64,000 bases of DNA from Heteronotia binoei. Lineage: Eukaryota. A program made the translations under genes and the position numbers. Where the stretch lies: assembly GCF_032191835.1 (NCBI RefSeq), contig NC_083229.1, positions 30,566,001 through 30,630,000 on the forward strand. Direction: 5' to 3'. A model generated the notes under the pieces. That model was not told where the DNA came from, did no database searches, and saw nothing but the letters and a program-made list of their open reading frames with translations. Below are positions 2,219-61,551 of the stretch, one piece after another (the first letter of the stretch is position 1; each line of letters begins with the position of its first letter).

Positions 2219-2407
2219 CATATCAGTTGCAGAGTTGTCCTGACCCACGTCCATTCCGCAATGGTTTTGTCATTGGAACAGACTTTACTGTAGGACAAAC
2301 CGTTTCATTTGAATGTTTCCCCGGATACACTTTAATTGGGAACTCGGCACTTACTTGCCTTCATGGGATCAGTCGGAATTGGAATCATCCTCTACCAAGG
2401 TGTGAAG
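2219..2407 (+). CDS. CSMD3: CSMD3 exon (189 nt), Sushi domain
   Basis: tttcag|CATAT ... GAAG|gtatgt; (A)YQLQSCPDPRPFRNG...WNHPLPRCE. Confidence 0.95.
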
Positions 2408-4039
2408 GTATGTTTTCATTTTTGTTAGTTCATTTTTGATGTCCGCATGGGACTGCACAGGCACATAGCTAGCCACCAGAAGATTTTGTAACTAGCTTAG
2501 TAACAAAGCAGGTGGAACCCCTCACAATGGGAGCTGTTGAGACCATTTTCCTGCCAATAGTTGCATGCTCCAGGGAGAGGCTCCACTCTGCCTCCGTTCT
2601 CTCTTTGCCACCATTGGAAAAGAACAGTTCTTGGCTTCTGTTTCTTGGTCTTCAAAAAATTTGTTGCTTTTGAAAAAGATGACAATGGATAAACACTCCA
2701 TTTGATTGTTGTGTCTGGGGGAGAGCCATAATGTATTGGCACTTAAAATCACACTGTTCAGCTCAAGGCCACTTTATGGGAAAAGGCTCTCTCTATTTTT
2801 TTAAAATACATCAATCTTTATTAAAAACAAAGATTTAAAACAAATACATAAAAAGAGCATCAATTTTGCTTACCAGACAGTTATGAATTTTGCTTGATTT
2901 TTTTTTAAAGGGATGGTGGCTGTAGGATTGTAAGCATCAAATGAGCCACATATATGGATGTGCACAGATGCTCAGTACACATTACAATTGTTAACCTGGC
3001 AGCAAAAACATCTGCCCTGCTAGTACAGCCTGTAATCTTAATCCCCAGACCAGTCCCTGACTGCACTTCCTACCCTCTATTGGTGATTTCAGCCCACTCT
3101 ATTCCAAGGTCAGATCTGAACCAAAGACATTCCAGGACACCCGGAAATTTCCAACCAGGTCCTCTTCCGAATCTCTACCAAAGAAACACAAGTCTAAACA
3201 TAAGACTCAATGTATAGGAATCAATTAAGCACCTGGAACTAAAGAAGCCAGGTTCAAAGGAATCAGAGTTGGTTCCAAAGACTGTTGTTGAGATCAGCAA
3301 GCATACTACCCCACACACTTCATCTCACACTTGCTTGTCAGCAGCACAGTTGGTACATGAACTGGCACCATCAGTTGATAATACCCACAAAATACATTCT
3401 AGGACCTCCTGCCCCACATTCTCAGTGGACACATTTGGGACCATGACAACAGTATCCTTGCTATCACCCTCCTCAGTATCATCAAGGATGGTCAGAACCA
3501 TCAGAACCATACATGGAACCAATGGGGCTGATGATGGAACAGCTGCAGACATCTGAGGACTTGGACCCTCATTCAGGACTGATCACTTATGGTTCCAAAG
3601 AGGAGGAGGAATTCGGGTCCATAGCCTGTTCAGGGGTGGCTTTGGAACTGTCCCCTGATGACGCTGTTGGAGACCATGACTCTCTGTTCCCAAATGAGAA
3701 CTTGCATCTTTATTCTGAACAAATGGTGCAATAATTAGACACCAGATAACATTCATGGAAGCTAGCCTTCGTAATAAGATCCTAGGTTGACTCTATCCTG
3801 ATATGCCAATGATTGTGGCCTTCCCACCTCTAGAGGGAATCATAGAGATGGTGAAATTCATTTGGGGGAAAATCATCTTCAATTCCTGCCATGTTTTGAA
3901 AACTCGAGAATATGTAGAGGGTTCAACAAGAAGGCGGTCCCTTCCTTTTCATCCATCCTGCACCATCCACTAGGGTGACCATAATGTCTGAAGGCCAGCC
4001 AGGGACACGTTGGGGGGGGGAGGTAGGGGTGTGCGCGCC

Positions 4040-4235
4040 GCCGGAAACAGGAAGTGACGTCACTTCCGGTGACGGCATGCCACCACAGGAAACAGGAAGT
4101 GACATCACTTCCTGTGACATCATTTCCCCGCGTCACCTGCCGGAAACGGGAAGTGACATCACTTCCTGTGACATCATTTCCCCCAAATGCCACTGCCGGA
4201 AACAGGAAGTGACTTCACAGCACTTCCTGTGACAT
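4040..4235. promoter_or_regulatory. About four tandem GGAAGTGAC(G/A)TCACTTCC palindromes (ETS-CRE composite-like)
   Basis: Perfect 18-bp palindrome 4050-4067; copies with one mismatch at 4095 and 4149; degenerate copy at 4205. Function not shown. Confidence 0.5.
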
Positions 4236-4748
4236 CCCCAAAAATCCCCCAAATATCACCGCCGGAAACAATTTTGTTCTGAAATCCTGTATATACTTCA
4301 TCAGTATATGGGATAAGGCACTTTCTCAACTGTGCTGCATAATGCAGCCTATTTATTTTGTCCTGTTTGCTCTGTTGGCTCTATCTGCGCCACCTTCATC
4401 ACTTTCGGGGTGTGGATCCCCCAGTGGGGTGCTCTCCCGACTCCCTCCGCCGGCTGTTTCTGATAGCCCTGCGCCTCCTCTTTCATTTGATATGTGTCCC
4501 GTGCGGGTGCTACCCTCCCGCCGGGAGATGCCGCAAAATGAGCCCCCCTGAGGCTTATGGCGGCAGGGCTCGGGGGAAGCGAGCTAGACTGCTGTTCTTT
4601 TGAGGGGTTATAGAGTGTTTCGAGCCCGTCCCTGTGGCATCGGTCCCATCGTTGTGGGGCCCAGGGGGCCGGCGCAGCGGCACGCCGAAGCAGCCTGTCA
4701 CTAATAACACAGGTCGAGATGCAGGACAGGAACTCGGAAGTGACCGAC

Positions 4749-4806
4749 AGGAAGGAAGGAAGGAAGGAAGGAAGGAAGGGAGGGAGGGAGGGAGGGAAGA
4801 AAGGAA
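4749..4806. repeat. (GGAA)n/(GGGA)n simple repeat inside the hAT element
   Basis: aggaaggaaggaaggaaggaaggaaggaagggagggagggagggagggaagaaaggaagg read directly. Confidence 0.9.
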
Positions 4807-4924
4807 GGCCGCCCCCCGCCCCCCCCCGCTTTCGGCCCCCTTACCTCGTTCCAGGGCGGCGGAGAGTCCAGCGGCGGCGGCGATTCCAGGGCGGCAGCCT
4901 CGCGGCGAGGGAGGGAGGGAGCTG

Positions 4925-5885
4925 CCGGCGCTGGCCTCTGGAGGCCTCCAGGGACCAGCGCCGGCTGCTCCGCGGCTTCCCCGCGGCCTCCGCTGGTCCC
5001 TGGAGGCCCTCCAGAGACTCTGGAGGGCCTCCAGGGACCAGCGGAGGCCGCGGGGAGGCCTTCGCTGGCCGGCGCTGGTCCCGGAAGGCCTTCCAGAGGC
5101 TCTGGAAGGCCTTCTGGGACCAGCGCCGGGTGCTCCGCGGCTTCCCCGCGGCCTCCGCTGGTCCCTGGAGGCCCTCCAGAGATTCTGGAGGGCCTCCAGG
5201 GACCAGCGGAGGCCGCGGGGAGGCCTTCGCTGGCCGGCGCTGGTCCCGGAAGGCCTTCCAGAGGCTCTGGAAGGCCTTCCGGGACCAGCGCCGGGTGCTC
5301 CGCGGCTTCCCCGCGGCCTCCGCTGGTCCCTGGAGGCCCTCCAGAGACTCTGGAGGGCCTCCAGGGACCAGCGGAGGCCGCGGGGAGGCCTTCGCTGGCC
5401 GGCGCTGGTCCCGGAAGGCCTTCCAGAGGCTCTGGAAGGCCTTCCGGGACCAGCGCCGGGTGCCCCGCGGCCTCCCCGTGGCCTCCGCTGGTCCCTGGAG
5501 GCCCTCCAGAGACTGTGGAGGGCTTCCAGGGACCAGCAGAGGCCGCGGGGAGGCCTTCGCTGGCCGGCGCTGGTCCCGGAAGGCCTTCCAGAGAATCTGG
5601 AAGGCCTTCCGGGACCAGCGCCGGGTGCTCCGCGGCTTCCCCGCGGCCTCCGCTGGTCCCTGGAGGCCCTCCAGAGACTCTGGAGGGCTTCCAGGGACCA
5701 GCGGAGGCCGTGGGGAGGCCTTCGCTGGCCGGCGCTGGTCCCGGAAGGCCTTCCAGAGGCTCTGGAAGGCCTTCCGGGACCAGCGCCGGCTGCTCCGCGG
5801 CCTCTCCGCGGCCTCCGCTGGTCCATGGAGGCCCTCCAGAGACTCTGGAGGGCTTCCAGCGACCAGCGGAGGCCGCGGAGAGGCC
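4925..5885. repeat. GC-rich minisatellite, 165-bp unit, about 5.8 copies, each unit containing two long palindromes
   Basis: Unit anchor CCG(C/T)GGCCTCCGCTGG recurs at 4981, 5146, 5311, 5476, 5641, 5806 (exact 165 spacing). Confidence 0.95.
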
Positions 5886-6925
5886 TCTGCCACCGCTGCC
5901 GGCCCCGCGCTCGGGCGGGGAAGGCGGCGAGTGAGGGAGGGAGCGTCCCTGCGCATGCGCAGGGGCCCTGCGCAGGCGCAGGGACGCTCCCTCCCTCACT
6001 CGCCGCCTTCCCCGCCGGCGCCCGCGGCCCACCGCCTCCGGGGCTGGCTAAACCGGGACCTTTAATGTTCCCGGTATAGGCAGCCCGGGAGCCGGGATTG
6101 GGTGGCCAGAACCGGGAATGTCCCGGGAGACCGGGACGGTCTGGCCACCCTACCATCCACCCTATTAGCTGAAGAGATGGAGGCTAAGCAAATAGTTGGA
6201 TCCATTTCACTTCAGGGCAGGAAGATCAATGCCTTGAGCCATAAAGCTTTATTGGTCATCAACCCCAGAAGAGCTATCAAGCTATTATGGCAGTGTACCT
6301 CTTGCTCTGCTACTAAGCTACATGAAAAATCTTTTTTGTGGCTGGCCTGCACACCTGTGCAGTCCCACATTTGCCTGCACAGTAACAACTCAATGAACAA
6401 CATTTACAGGTAAGGGCAACATTATGTTCATTTACTGGATGTTTTGATATTGTGTGTTCAGTGAATTCATAAGGAGAACCAGCACCATTCTTCCCTTCTA
6501 ACAGATCAGATTGACTACAAGAAAAGATGTGGTTTCTGGGACTGCATGATTCCTTCGTTAAGGATGATGGGAGAGATTGAAAGGAAAGTCTGGGTAGAAA
6601 GAGTTTATGATCCCACTTCCTATTCCTTATCTTTTTTACAATGTTCATAGGTCCACGTCTACAGTGGGCCAGACAGTAAACCTATAGGAAGACACCTGTG
6701 TCACTTTACTCAATGTATAGTGCCTGCAGTATGTTAGGAAAATAACACAGGTTTCTCGATAACAAAATCCAACAAAGACTTGTTGTGTCTTTTATTAAGA
6801 CTGAACCATACCCTCCCCAGGCTCTGCATTCTAATCTCCATGAATGTCCTAATCCAGATTAGAAAACCCAGTTCTCTTCTCCCCCCATTTTTTTACTTTG
6901 TTTTGTTTGTTTTAATAATAATAAT

Positions 6926-7170: not shown

Positions 7171-7404
<234 letters not shown>

Positions 7405-8905: not shown

Positions 8906-9310
8906 CTAGGCTTTTAGTGAACAGCGGATGTCCAATATTATTGGTTCCTCTTGCTCAAACTGCTGTCTAGCTGTTGTGGGGAGGGAGCTAGTTAACCTAG
9001 GAACACAGGCCACATCTGTGTATAAGGATATAATAATATCTGAAACAGTACTGGGATAGTACTATTTTTTTTTTCTCTGAGTGCCATCTTTATTATTGTT
9101 TATTGCAATTTTAATTGATCTTTTTTTTAAGAATTCCAATGTGATTATTGTTATAACTTTTATATTCCAACCTTTCCTAAGCCCCTTTGCCAGGAGGGTG
9201 GGACAGAAAATGAATGAATGAACAACCTTACAGGCCTGATTTTTCATTCTTAGACCCAGGAGGGCTAGAGGCTTGGTCCCTTGGTCTCCGGCTGTCTGGG
9301 CAGTTAAGTG

Positions 9311-10382
9311 CAGCGGTCCCCAACCTTTTTGGTCCCAGGGACCGGCTCTAGGGCCAGCCCGCCGACTGCAGCCCAGAGCAGGCAGTCTGGGGGGACCCAA
9401 TTCCTCCCTCCTGTTTTCCTCCCTCATTTAACTCCTCCCTCCCTAGCCACCCATGCAGCCTCACCGCTTCCTCCTGTCCCCATTTTCCTCCTCTCTCCTT
9501 CCCCCCCGTGCAGCCTTGCCACCTCTTAAAGGTGCAACTTGACTCCTACTTTGTTCTACTGCTTCAGACCAACTCGGCTGCCAACCTGGATCTATCCTCC
9601 TCCCACCCGTTTTCATCCCTCCCCCCCCCCCATGCAGCCTTGCCACCTCTTCTCTCCCCATTTCCTCCATTTTAAGGCTGGGGAAGGGTGGTGAAGTCCT
9701 TCCAGGTCGCTCTCTCCGCCAAATAGCTGTGGGGGGGAAACCGCCACAGCCAGTGGCACCTGAGGGCATGTCATGCCCCAGGCAGGCACCCCCCCAAAGC
9801 ACTTCAAACCCCCCTGGGCCCGCAGCACTCACCCCTTCCTTCCCTTCCCTTTCTGTCCTGTTCCATCGCTTTCCCTCCCCCGCACCCCAAATCATAGCAC
9901 AACGGAAGGAAAGGGAAGGAGGGTGGAGGTGGCGGTGGCGGGCTCTGAGGAGGAAGCAGACACACTGTGGCCAGCAGGGCGGGGGGAGGCAACAGGAAGG
10001 GAAGCGAAAGAGGTGACAGAGGAGGAGGCAGGCATGCTGCGGCTGGAGAGCCCAGGCGCAGGGGGGCAGTAGGCAAAGGGACGGAAAGGGAAAGGAAGGC
10101 AGCTGGTGGCCAGCAGCAGCGGTGAGCAATGCTGCCCTTGCCTCCTTCCCATTTGAGGAGGAGGCAAGGGCAGCATTGCTCGAAGCTGCTACAGCGGCTT
10201 TCCCAGCCGATCAGCTGATTAGTGGGAAGGGGAAGGAGGTGGGGAGGCTGTGCAGGGGGGACGAAGGAGGAAACAGGGGGAGGAGGAGGCACCGCGGGGG
10301 GGGGGGGGGCGAGGCTGCGTGGCCCATGGAAAACAGGCCACGGCCCACTACCAGTCCCCGGCCCAGGGGTTGGGGACCCCTG
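9311..10382. mobile_element. hAT (Charlie/MER1-like ends) non-autonomous element, 1072 bp
   Basis: CAGCGGTCCCCAACC ... GGTTGGGGACCCCTG; perfect TSD GTTAAGTG at 9303-9310 and 10383-10390. Confidence 0.9.
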
Positions 10383-11005
10383 GTTAAGTGGACTGGTGGC
10401 AGTGATACCAAGAGACATGAGGACTCACACTTCAGCCCTTTTGTTTGTCTTGCCCAACCCATAACACTTTAAAAGGTCTTAGCTTTAAGACACCTCTGAG
10501 TATGAAAGTTACATATAGATCCCTGACTCAGAAGAGATTAGTACACCTAAATTTCCATTAGCTGAGAATGACTTGTCCCATTAAATGGGACAAGAGTAAC
10601 TTACTTTGGAATAGGGCCAGTGTGAAAGATGCATGAGCAAGTGCTGTCATGGCACCAACTTTTTAAAAAAAATTCTTGCAGAGAACCAGTGATAGCAAGT
10701 ATACAAAACACTGCTTTTTACAAAAGCAGTCTATGAAAGAACAGGCGGTGCTTCCAAGGAATAACAATTATCCTGTGATGGAAAATAATCAAAGAAAACT
10801 TGGTGGAAGAAAAAAGAGAAGGAAAGGGACCAATTATAGGATGGGGAGTCTGCAGCAGTTGAGCCTATGGCCGCAAAGATAATGTTCATTCCATCTATAT
10901 TGCCTTGATCATCTTCTTTGGACTTCCATTTTAGTTTCCTGTAATTTTTATCTGGTCTGGTCCTACAAACACCATAAACATAGAAGATATTGGAAGAAGA
11001 TATTG

Positions 11006-11815: not shown

Positions 11816-11951
11816 NNNNNNNNNNNNNNNNNNNNNNNNNNNNNNNNNNNNNNNNNNNNNNNNNNNNNNNNNNNNNNNNNNNNNNNNNNNNNNNNNNNNN
11901 NNNNNNNNNNNNNNNNNNNNNNNNNNNNNNNNNNNNNNNNNNNNNNNNNNN
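11816..11951. other. Assembly gap (136 N)
   Basis: Run of N. Confidence 1.
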
Positions 11952-15654: not shown

Positions 15655-16040
15655 TGTGGGGTGTGTTTTCCCCCCCCTTGAGAAAACTTTTTGGATTTAG
15701 ACCCGCTGTTTTTTAGGTCCTGCTGTCTACACTTGCATTAACAATGAATATGACAACTGTTACTTTCCATGATCTTCCAATACACTCTGATCTGAAGGAA
15801 GTGTATTTCTCATCTTAATTTGAAAGAGCAGTGCCTCTTGACCTGTTTGTGGGGTGTGTTTTTTCCCCCCTTGAGAAAACTTTTTGGATTTAGACCCGTT
15901 GTTTTTTAGGTCCTGCTGTCTACACTTGCAGTAACAATGAATATGACAACTGTTACTTTCCATGATCTTCCAATACACTCTGATCTGAAGGAAGTGTATT
16001 TCTCATCTTAATTTGGAAGAGCAGTGCCTCTTGACCTGTT
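15655..16040. repeat. Tandem duplication of 193 bp (2 copies, about 4 differences)
   Basis: 15655-15847 vs 15848-16040 compared by eye. Confidence 0.92.
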
Positions 16041-16345
16041 TATTACTTAATGTGATTAGAAGGGTTTGAAGAGGGTTCTTAGATGTGTTTTCTCGAGAAT
16101 CCTTAAATTTCATTGTTTCCCCACCAGTGTCAGATTATCCAAAATACATAATAAATGAGAGATTGCCACTGGCTAATGTACTTGAGCTAGAAGTGAAAAT
16201 TCAGAAAAAAAGTATTTTAAATACTGTAGAGTCCAGGTAGTCTGCTTTGTAGCTTCCAAACCTTTCAAGATAGTGATTTTTTTTCTGTTATCATCCTGCA
16301 AAAAGGAGCAACATATTAATCATAACTCTTTCTGAATTTCCATAG

Positions 16346-43980: not shown

Positions 43981-44196
43981 TAGGGTTGCCAGGTCTGTGT
44001 TGGAAAATACCTGGAGACTTTGGGAGTGGGTTCAGGAGAGTGTGGGGTTTGGGGAGGGGAGGAGCCTCAGCATGGTACAACACCATAGAGTCCACCCTTC
44101 AAAGCAGCCATTTTCTCCAGGGGAGCTGATCTTTTCCAGCTGGAGATCAGTTGTAAAAGCAGATCTCCAATCTCTGCCTGGAGGATGGCAACCCTA
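43981..44196. mobile_element. TAGGGTTGCCA-ended hAT-like MITE
   Basis: Perfect TIR TAGGGTTGCCA / TGGCAACCCTA; TSD not clean. Confidence 0.75.
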
Positions 44197-52121: not shown

Positions 52122-52698
52122 TAGGGTTGCCAGGTCTGTGTTGGAAAATTCTGGAGACTTTGGGGATGAATCCGGGATAGAATGGGGTTTGGGGAGGGGC
52201 CTCAGAATGATACAGTGCCAAAGATTCCACCCTTCAAAGCAGCCATATTCTCCAGGGGAACTCACAAAAAAGAGAGAACCACAGAATAATAATAGCCTAT
52301 ACAAAAATAGACCATGATAAGATAACTAACAAACTTCACACAATATGTTTGAAATAATCACCTTATATAAAGTTAATGATATATCAAAAGCCAGTTCAAA
52401 CAATTGAATCATCAAGATACAATGATTTCCTCTATGTTGATAAATAAACACATGATTTAGCAACATACAAGAAATCATTGTGTCTTGATTCAGTTGTATG
52501 AATTGGCTATTGATAAATCATTAACTTTGTATAAGGTGATTATCTATTTCAAATATATTGTGCAGTTTGTTAGTTATCTTTCCATGGTCTATTTTTGTAT
52601 AGATTACTATGTTCTCCAGGGGAGCTGATTTCTGCCTGATGAAAATCAGTTGTAAAAGCAGGAAATATCCAGGTCCTACCTGGAGGCTGGTAACCCTA
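52122..52698. mobile_element. TAGGGTTGCCA-ended MITE split by a 350-bp AT-rich insertion
   Basis: TAGGGTTGCCA at 52122, TGGTAACCCTA ending 52698; host sequence TTCTCCAGGGGA duplicated at 52248-52259 and 52612-52623. Confidence 0.75.
52297..52602. repeat. AT-rich inverted repeat (about 130-bp arms, about 40-nt spacer)
   Basis: CTATACAAAAATAGACCATG...CAATGATTTC versus GAAATCATTG...CATGGTCTATTTTTGTATAG. Confidence 0.9.
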
Positions 52699-61384: not shown

Positions 61385-61551
61385 NNNNNNNNNNNNNNNN
61401 NNNNNNNNNNNNNNNNNNNNNNNNNNNNNNNNNNNNNNNNNNNNNNNNNNNNNNNNNNNNNNNNNNNNNNNNNNNNNNNNNNNNNNNNNNNNNNNNNNNN
61501 NNNNNNNNNNNNNNNNNNNNNNNNNNNNNNNNNNNNNNNNNNNNNNNNNNN
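61385..61551. other. Assembly gap (167 N)
   Basis: Run of N. Confidence 1.

What the first reader, a model, noticed from the sequence alone, without database searches (positions are those of the whole stretch)
4925..5885. 165-bp tandem unit made of two long perfect hairpins (palindrome-within-palindrome minisatellite)
Seen: the first unit has a perfect 36-bp arm / 1-nt spacer / 36-bp arm palindrome (4981-5053). It is followed by a 30-bp / 1-nt / 30-bp palindrome (CCGGCGCTGGTCCCGGAAGGCCTTCCAGAG|G|CTCTGGAAGGCCTTCCGGGACCAGCGCCGG, perfect in units 2-3). About 134 of 165 nt are in stems, and each arm holds smaller palindromes (GGAAGGCCTTCC). The two hairpins resemble each other, suggesting repeated fold-back synthesis. 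Inference: cruciform-prone DNA and, inside CSMD3 pre-mRNA, about 11 GC-rich dsRNA stems that could be ADAR or small-RNA substrates or alter splicing. The period is close to a chromatosome length (speculative).
Basis: partly seen in the sequence, partly recalled or inferred. Interest (0 to 1): 0.7.

Follow-up and report, generated by a model that had tools for sequence, protein, structure and literature searches.

The report
Hairpin repeat array inside hAT transposon
The 165-base repeat made of two near-perfect hairpins is real, but it is the internal filler of a 2.2-kb non-coding cut-and-paste (hAT-type) transposon sitting in an intron of a CUB/Sushi (CSMD-type) gene, and nothing found here shows that it does anything.

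Summary
Observation confirmed. A 165-bp unit is repeated 5.8 times (4936-5886, 96% alike). Each unit holds hairpin A (39-43-nt arms) and hairpin B (30-31-nt arms). Fold energies are 17-18 sd beyond shuffles.

The array is not a free-standing minisatellite. It lies inside a 2182-bp insertion (3971-6152) with 11-nt terminal inverted repeats TAGGGTGRCCA and a perfect 8-bp target duplication CCATCCAC. This is a non-autonomous hAT-type transposon. Reads from other runs break exactly at both ends into varied flanks, so the element is multi-copy.

It sits in an intron, between a Sushi exon and a CUB exon, on the sense strand. The CSMD3 paralogue was not tested.

A and B arms differ at 5 sites and all 5 are mirrored on the partner arm. 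So arms were copied from each other (fold-back or template switching) before the array amplified. Since then, 12 stem substitutions have accumulated and none is compensated. That points to youth, not selection for pairing.

RNA reads barely cover the array, no editing signal was seen (low power), and Rfam gives only sub-threshold generic hairpin hits.

The scan already reported the same kind of array in other hAT copies of this genome (s1-330137, s1-322614). This is an ordinary example of a known kind.

The parts
3963..3970 (.). left copy of the 8-bp target-site duplication CCATCCAC
   Evidence: Identical to 6153-6160.
3971..6152 (.). whole non-autonomous hAT-type transposon (2182 bp) that carries the array
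   Evidence: TIRs and TSD. Reads from family copies break into heterogeneous flanks at 3971 and 6152/6153 (table 7). No credible coding capacity. GC 68% and CpG o/e 0.69, against 0.11-0.34 in the flanks.
3971..3981 (+). left terminal inverted repeat TAGGGTGACCA
   Evidence: Fits the hAT terminal consensus YARNG.
4040..4260 (.). subterminal ~54-bp repeats with GGAAGTGAC(G/A)TCACTTCC palindromes
   Evidence: TRF 4088-4218; perfect palindromes at 4050-4067 and 4092-4115. This part has the highest read depth of the element.
4920..4969 (.). B0: short 50-nt palindrome (centre GG|CC) at the left edge of the array; looks like the un-extended form of hairpins A and B
   Evidence: Self-alignment 22 of 25 pairs; its halves match the outer and inner parts of the A and B arms.
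4936..5886 (.). 165-bp x 5.8 tandem array (6 A hairpins, 5 B hairpins)
4974..5060 (.). hairpin A of unit 1 (87 nt; perfect core 4978-5056); further copies at +165, +330, +495, +660, +825
   Evidence: (I11-I24).
5234..5294 (.). hairpin B of unit 2 (30+1+30, perfect); other copies at 5069-5129, 5399-5459, 5564-5624, 5728-5790
5901..6029 (.). palindrome C: unrelated 129-nt near-perfect palindrome (centre 5965) with two small hairpins at its tip; 4902-4922 is a direct copy of part of its left arm
   Evidence: folded.
6142..6152 (-). right terminal inverted repeat TAGGGTGGCCA (read on the - strand)
6153..6160 (.). right copy of the 8-bp target-site duplication CCATCCAC
2236..2403 (+). upstream host exon encoding a Sushi domain (span of the domain match)
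   Evidence: Pfam PF00084, E 1.5e-11.
7226..7403 (+). downstream host exon encoding the first half of a CUB domain (ag|CT...TG|gt)
   Evidence: Pfam PF00431, E 6.6e-13; splice signals read.

Best explanation
The array is a young, non-coding, palindromic minisatellite that forms the variable interior of a non-autonomous hAT-type DNA transposon. It most likely arose in steps. First, a short GC-rich palindrome of the B0 type was lengthened by fold-back or template-switch copying of one arm onto the other, giving long perfect hairpins. Two diverged versions, A and B, came to lie side by side. The A+B pair (165 bp) was then amplified about six-fold by slippage or unequal exchange. The element, probably already carrying the array, was cut and pasted into an intron of a CUB/Sushi (CSMD-type) gene, where it made the 8-bp duplication. 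At this site the array is a passive passenger. It can in principle form cruciforms or RNA stems, but there is no sign that this is used or selected. Shown here: the anatomy, the transposon boundaries, the multi-copy nature, the intronic position, the mirrored A/B differences and the absence of compensation. Inferred: the order of events, the mechanism of arm copying, and that the array came in with the element.
For: TIR TAGGGTGaCCA / TAGGGTGgCCA and a perfect 8-bp TSD. Reads from other runs cover the two ends heavily and break at 3971 and 6152/6153 into flanks with low agreement (0.43-0.7), so there are many insertion sites. One contig joins 4584 to 6042, a family copy that lacks the array; other contigs repeat the B0 hairpin. 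The interior is therefore variable (tables 5 and 5c). There is no real protein family in any array ORF, and all six frames are open only because the unit contains no stop triplet on either strand. All 5 differences between the 30-nt A and B arms are mirrored; independent hits would give this with p about 2e-8. Of 19 unit-specific substitutions 12 lie in stems and none is mirrored: 6 give G.U and 6 break the pair. One mismatch (C>T at unit position 49; index 48) is shared by units 4-6, so it was copied during amplification and not corrected. Template switching is a published way to create perfect stems in one event (PMC8794818, PMC10710096, PMC13100816). Tandem repeats inside non-autonomous DNA transposons are well documented (PMC4079207, PMC9659126). 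Earlier notes of this scan describe the same 165-nt two-palindrome array, about six units, in another hAT copy of this genome (s1-330137; unchecked here).
Against: No second copy of the element lies in this window and none could be fetched. No autonomous hAT partner was identified. The low RNA coverage of the array may be a library bias against 74% GC hairpins and not true absence, so an RNA-level role is not excluded. High CpG o/e (0.63) could mean the array is kept unmethylated and not merely young.
Confidence: 0.8

Rival explanations
1. The hairpins are functional RNA substrates. Transcribed within the host pre-mRNA or from the element, the 30-43-bp stems are processed into small RNAs (hpRNA, endo-siRNA or new miRNAs) or edited by ADAR, and may silence the hAT family or modulate splicing.
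For: Very stable predicted stems. Sense-strand intronic position 1.3 kb upstream of an exon. Six of 12 stem substitutions still allow G.U pairs in + strand RNA. Transposon inverted repeats and template switching are known sources of new miRNAs (PMC10710096).
Against: RNA raw reads give depth 0-2 on the array against 10-50 on the left arm, and the flanking intron is at 0-1. No A>G row falls in the array (table 3). All Rfam hits are below gathering scores and spread over dozens of unrelated hairpin families on both strands. No compensatory change was seen. From general knowledge, perfect stems with 1-3-nt loops are poor Drosha substrates, and only about 23% of stem bases are A or U. The libraries used cannot see small RNAs, so the test is weak.
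Confidence: 0.06
2. The array is a DNA-level cis-regulatory or chromatin module carried by the transposon: a CpG-island-like block with paired ETS cores (CCGGAAG / CTTCCGG in every B hairpin) that binds factors or positions nucleosomes at a 165-bp spacing.
For: GC 74% and CpG o/e 0.63 over 951 bp, in flanks at 0.11-0.34. Five CCGGAAG and four CTTCCGG sites, one pair per B hairpin except the first, which has lost one. Two of the five A-to-B differences create that motif. The element's left end carries ETS-CRE-like palindromes.
Against: The motif copies are repeats of one unit, so they amount to a single observation. No methylation, chromatin or binding data exist. Four CpG-to-TpG/CpA changes among the 19 variants suggest ordinary methylation decay. 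Youth alone explains the CpG content.
Confidence: 0.1
3. The array or its copy number is an assembly artefact, such as collapsed or expanded repeats or fold-back chimeric reads.
For: No long read spanning 4900-5900 could be examined. Palindromic repeats are hard to assemble. Contig coverage inside the array is patchy.
Against: Units carry distinct substitutions in a nested pattern. Independent short contigs reproduce the B0-A junction with 0 differences (4935-5034), a full B hairpin (5344-5473) and the last A hairpin (5800-5884) (table 8). Earlier notes report similar arrays elsewhere in the assembly.
Confidence: 0.03

Closest known systems
Non-autonomous hAT elements with variable internal filler (Ds-like deletion derivatives; cargo-filled hAT elements of squamates)
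   Same: 8-bp TSD, short TIRs starting YARNG, no transposase, multi-copy with a modular interior that differs between copies.
   Different: The interior here is dominated by a tandem array of long, near-perfect GC-rich palindromes. No autonomous partner was identified, and no repeat library (Repbase, Dfam) was available to name the family.
Transposon-internal tandem repeats that seed satellites (e.g. Tetris TIR-220 in Drosophila virilis, PMC4079207; review PMC9659126)
   Same: A 150-220-bp unit amplified inside a non-autonomous DNA transposon; modular, rearranged family members.
   Different: In Tetris the repeats lie within long foldback TIRs. Here the TIRs are 11 nt and the array is central, each unit is itself two hairpins, and no kb-scale free array was seen.
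Hairpins created or perfected by template-switch mutation (PMC8794818, PMC10710096, PMC13100816)
   Same: Long perfect stems, and multi-site mirrored differences between related hairpins, are best explained by copying one arm from the other.
   Different: Those studies concern single hairpins in RNA genes, miRNAs or promoters. Here the product was then amplified as a tandem array inside a mobile element, and no ancestral state could be reconstructed.
miRNA precursors and hpRNA loci
   Same: Stable stem-loops of 60-90 nt.
   Different: No Rfam family reaches its gathering score, stems are perfect with 1-3-nt loops, both strands score alike, and no small-RNA evidence exists.

Membership tests
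hAT superfamily (non-autonomous member) | 8-bp target-site duplication | tested here: met
   CCATCCAC at 3963-3970 and 6153-6160, 8 of 8.
hAT superfamily (non-autonomous member) | short terminal inverted repeats beginning 5'-YARNG | tested here: met
   TAGGGTGACCA / TAGGGTGGCCA, 10 of 11. No longer inverted similarity between the ends.
hAT superfamily (non-autonomous member) | mobility: many copies that share both ends and have different flanks | tested here: met
   Reads from RNA and DNA runs stop matching at 3971 and 6152/6153 and continue into heterogeneous sequence (table 7).
hAT superfamily (non-autonomous member) | an autonomous partner encoding a hAT transposase with matching ends | not testable with these tools
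   No transposase domain in the element's ORFs. The rest of the genome cannot be searched from here.
Foldback (FB-like) transposons | long terminal inverted repeats, built of tandem repeats, making up most of the element | tested here: not met
   The left and right parts are not inverted copies of each other beyond 11 nt. The palindromes are local, within each unit.
miRNA precursor families (Rfam) | score at or above a family's gathering threshold | tested here: not met
   Best hit 80 bits against a gathering score of 137. 322 sub-threshold hits to many unrelated hairpin models on both strands.
ADAR-edited or Dicer-processed long dsRNA | clustered A>G differences or small RNAs from the stems in RNA data | tested here: inconclusive
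   Depth is 0-2 on the array in two RNA raw-read runs and no A>G row was listed. The libraries are not small-RNA libraries and the tissue is unknown.
Structured RNA under selection | compensatory (both-side) changes among copies | tested here: not met
   0 of 12 stem substitutions among units are mirrored. The 5 mirrored A/B differences predate amplification and fit arm-copying equally well.
CpG island (Gardiner-Garden and Frommer criteria) | over 200 bp, GC above 50%, CpG o/e above 0.6 | tested here: met
   951 bp, GC 74%, o/e 0.63. Methylation state is not testable here.
CSMD (CUB and Sushi multiple domains) host gene | alternating CUB and Sushi exons followed by a run of Sushi exons on one strand | tested here: met
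   On the + strand: Sushi 2236-2403, CUB 7226-7403, CUB near 22.5 kb, then 7 Sushi exons from 25 to 57 kb. The paralogue (CSMD3) was not tested.

The most novel reading that the evidence does not exclude
A hAT family of this (reportedly gecko) genome spreads a ready-made cassette of about a dozen perfect GC-rich hairpins, with paired ETS cores and CpG-island composition, into introns of many genes. The cassette would be used there, either as a source of hairpin-derived small RNAs that police the family or as a portable unmethylated regulatory block. The perfection of the stems would then be maintained by recurrent arm-to-arm copying and not merely by youth.
Probability: 0.06. Interest if true: 0.55.

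Novelty: new member of a known kind. Interest (0 to 1): 0.2.

Why it matters
As it stands this matters little. It is a clear, well-bounded example of two known processes: template-switch or fold-back creation of perfect hairpins, and tandem amplification inside a non-autonomous DNA transposon.

It has some value as a natural record. The five mirrored A/B differences, set against twelve unmirrored later substitutions, separate an early phase of arm-copying from later neutral decay.

It would matter more if family-wide data showed that the hairpin cassette is recurrently re-perfected, processed into small RNAs, or kept unmethylated. The family would then be a vehicle that seeds structured or regulatory DNA across squamate genes.

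It also matters practically. Such arrays are likely sites of instability and of assembly or short-read drop-out in introns of large neuronal genes.

Tried and rejected
1. Other copies within the window: blastn of 3900-6250 against the window found none outside the element.

2. Related copies elsewhere: exact-pattern scans of metagenome contigs for the hairpin arm and for the right end both found nothing. The phage, plasmid and E. coli collections are irrelevant to an animal transposon and were not used.

3. Coding reading: 165 is 55 x 3 and all six frames are open over the array. But the unit has no stop triplet on either strand, and Pfam gives only sub-threshold low-complexity noise with no passing stretch. 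Rejected.

4. Known RNA family: rejected.

5. Foldback-transposon reading: rejected, because the element's halves are not inverted copies.

6. TIR-like motifs elsewhere (42545, 43981/44196, 52122/52698; TAGGGTTGCCA) belong to a different, older MITE-like family with no similarity to the array.

7. Reads: no run holds more than 27% of the element's sampled words. Copy number, polymorphism and expression of this particular copy could therefore not be settled.

8. The N runs at 11816-11951 and 61385-61551 were left untouched.

9. The costly protein searches were not used, because no open protein question remained.

Full report
**What is there**

The stretch 4936-5886 is a head-to-tail array of a 165-bp unit: 5.8 copies, 96% matches, no indels. 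Written in register, each unit holds two palindromes.

- Hairpin A has a single central base at 5017+165k. In units 1 and 3 its arms are perfect over 39 nt (4978-5056, 5308-5386), and they reach 43 nt with one mismatch. Units 2, 4, 5 and 6 have 1-4 mismatches.
- Hairpin B is centred at 5099+165k. It is perfect over 30 nt in units 2 and 3 and over 31 nt in unit 5. Units 1 and 4 each have one mismatch.

That makes 6 A hairpins and 5 B hairpins. A shorter 50-nt palindrome (B0, 4920-4969) lies at the left edge of the array.

One unit folds at -178 kcal/mol as RNA (z = -17) and -108 kcal/mol as DNA (z = -18.5). None of 200 dinucleotide shuffles comes close. The whole block 4900-6030 folds into nested long stems.

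**Where it is**

The array is not free-standing. Reading outwards shows an insertion from 3971 to 6152 (2182 bp). It is bounded by TAGGGTGACCA on the left and by the reverse complement of TAGGGTGGCCA on the right. It is flanked by a perfect 8-bp direct duplication, CCATCCAC, at 3963-3970 and 6153-6160. An 8-bp duplication with short inverted ends of the YARNG type is the signature of hAT transposons.

The element has no credible coding capacity. Its long ORFs run through the array only because the unit contains no stop triplet on either strand. Pfam returns only sub-threshold low-complexity noise. The two halves of the element are not inverted copies of each other, so it is not a foldback element.

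Besides the array, the interior holds:
- about 54-bp subterminal repeats with GGAAGTGACGTCACTTCC-type palindromes (4040-4260);
- a unique segment (4270-4770);
- an (AGGA)n tract;
- a third, unrelated 129-nt palindrome (5901-6029), part of whose left arm is also found as a direct copy at 4902-4922, just before the array.

**Evidence that the element is mobile and modular**

No public run holds more than 27% of the element's sampled words. Four runs were laid on 3900-6250.

- The left arm (3979-4768) and the right end (6033-6152) are covered many-fold. Matching stops exactly at 3971 and 6152/6153, and the reads continue into flanks of low agreement (0.43-0.7). That means many insertion sites.
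- One contig joins 4584 directly to 6042, which is a family member without the array.
- Other contigs repeat the B0 hairpin.
- There are breakpoints in both directions at 4269/4270.

The family's interior is therefore variable, as is usual for non-autonomous hAT elements.

Independent short contigs reproduce three parts of the array: the B0-A junction with no difference (4935-5034), a complete B hairpin (5344-5473, with differences only in the A-B linker) and the last A hairpin (5800-5884). This argues against an assembly artefact. No long read could be examined.

**Host context**

Stop-free segments were scanned one by one against Pfam. On the + strand they give a Sushi exon (2236-2403), a CUB exon (7226-7403, with ag/gt splice signals), another CUB exon near 22.5 kb, and seven Sushi exons between 25 and 57 kb. 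That is the architecture of a CSMD-type gene.

The element lies in the intron between the Sushi and CUB exons, about 1.07 kb upstream of the acceptor (the array ends about 1.34 kb upstream), and is carried in the pre-mRNA.

**How the hairpins arose**

The 30-nt arms of A and B are homologous (25 of 30). All five differences are mirrored on the partner arm, so both hairpins are perfect. Independent substitutions would give this with a probability of about 2e-8. One arm must therefore have been copied from the other after A and B diverged.

B0 looks like the un-extended precursor. It has the outer arm (CCGGCGCTGG..), then the inner small palindrome (CTGGAGGCCTCCAG), then the outer arm reversed. 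A and B look like a left half of that structure folded back about a new centre (AGAGnCTCT).

It also fits the published template-switch mechanism, which can create or re-perfect a stem in one event (PMC8794818, PMC10710096, PMC13100816).

**What happened after amplification**

Among the units there are 19 substitutions, 14 of them transitions and 4 of the CpG-decay type. Twelve lie in stems and none is mirrored: six leave a G.U pair and six break the pair. One mismatch (C>T at unit position 49; index 48) is shared by units 4-6. It was therefore copied during amplification and never corrected.

So the perfection of the stems reflects youth, not maintenance or selection for pairing. The high CpG content (o/e 0.63 in the array and 0.69 in the element, against 0.11-0.34 in the flanks) fits a recent insertion. 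An unmethylated state cannot be excluded.

**The functional proposals**

- In two RNA raw-read runs the array has depth 0-2, against 10-50 on the left arm, and the intron flanks are at 0-1.
- No A>G row falls in the array. The A>G rows elsewhere are family variants; the clearest one (4234) is also seen in DNA contigs.
- This test is weak. The array is 74% GC hairpin sequence, which is poorly sequenced. The tissue is unknown. Small RNAs are invisible in these libraries. Reads come from all family copies.
- Rfam gives 322 sub-gathering hits to dozens of unrelated single-hairpin miRNA models on both strands, which is what any perfect hairpin gives.
- From general knowledge, perfect stems with 1-3-nt loops are poor Drosha substrates, and GC-rich centres extrude cruciforms slowly.
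- The 165-bp "chromatosome" remark cannot be tested here. Periods of this size are common among satellites.

**Comparison with what is known**

Tandem repeats inside non-autonomous DNA transposons, and their occasional growth into satellites, are well described (PMC4079207, PMC9659126). So is template switching as a maker of hairpins.

Earlier notes of this scan (AI notes, not checked by me) report a 165-nt two-palindrome array of about six units in another hAT copy of this genome (s1-330137). They also report other hairpin arrays in hAT elements (s1-322614, s1-345470), and they call the genome a gecko. If s1-330137 is right, the array was already in the element when it transposed. I could not fetch those copies to test this.

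**Verdict**

The structural and origin parts of the interpretation are supported. The functional parts are unsupported. This is a new member of a known kind and of low interest.

Noticed in passing
window 4270-4700: RNA raw reads cover this unique segment of the element at 10-35x. They show fixed differences from the window (4281 G>C, 4432 C>G, 4476 T>C, 4511 T>C, 4548 C>T) and a uniform loose end before 4269 (agreement 0.83-1). This points to one dominant expressed source about 1% diverged whose likeness starts at 4270, so the module may be captured from, or shared with, an expressed sequence.
   Followed up: no
window 4040-4260: Subterminal ~54-bp repeats carry perfect palindromes GGAAGTGACGTCACTTCC (ETS-like halves around a CRE-like TGACGTCA core). 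This is the most deeply covered part of the element in all four runs.
   Followed up: partly
window 5081-5777 (each B hairpin): Every B hairpin holds an inverted pair of ETS core motifs, CCGGAAG / CTTCCGG; the first B has lost one. Two of the five A-to-B arm differences create this motif. Because the units are copies, this counts as a single observation.
   Followed up: partly
window 5901-6029 and 4902-4922: A third, unrelated 129-nt near-perfect palindrome with two 18-nt hairpins at its tip follows the array. A 21-nt piece of its left arm is repeated directly just before the array, so the array is bracketed by the same sequence.
   Followed up: partly
window 42545, 43981-44196, 52122-52698: Older MITE-like elements (216 and 577 bp) have ends TAGGGTTGCCAGGTCTGTGTTGGAAAA, close to the TIR of the element studied but otherwise unrelated. 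The 577-bp copy contains a long internal AT-rich inverted repeat.
   Followed up: partly
window 15655-16041: A 193-bp x 2.0 tandem duplication at 97% identity; not examined.
   Followed up: no
window 9000-11000: A GC-rich block (49-54% GC) with strong and opposite GC skew (-0.19, then +0.20) in an otherwise 35-45% GC intron. A long low-complexity ORF lies on the - strand at 9464-10210. It may be another GC-rich repeat or element.
   Followed up: no
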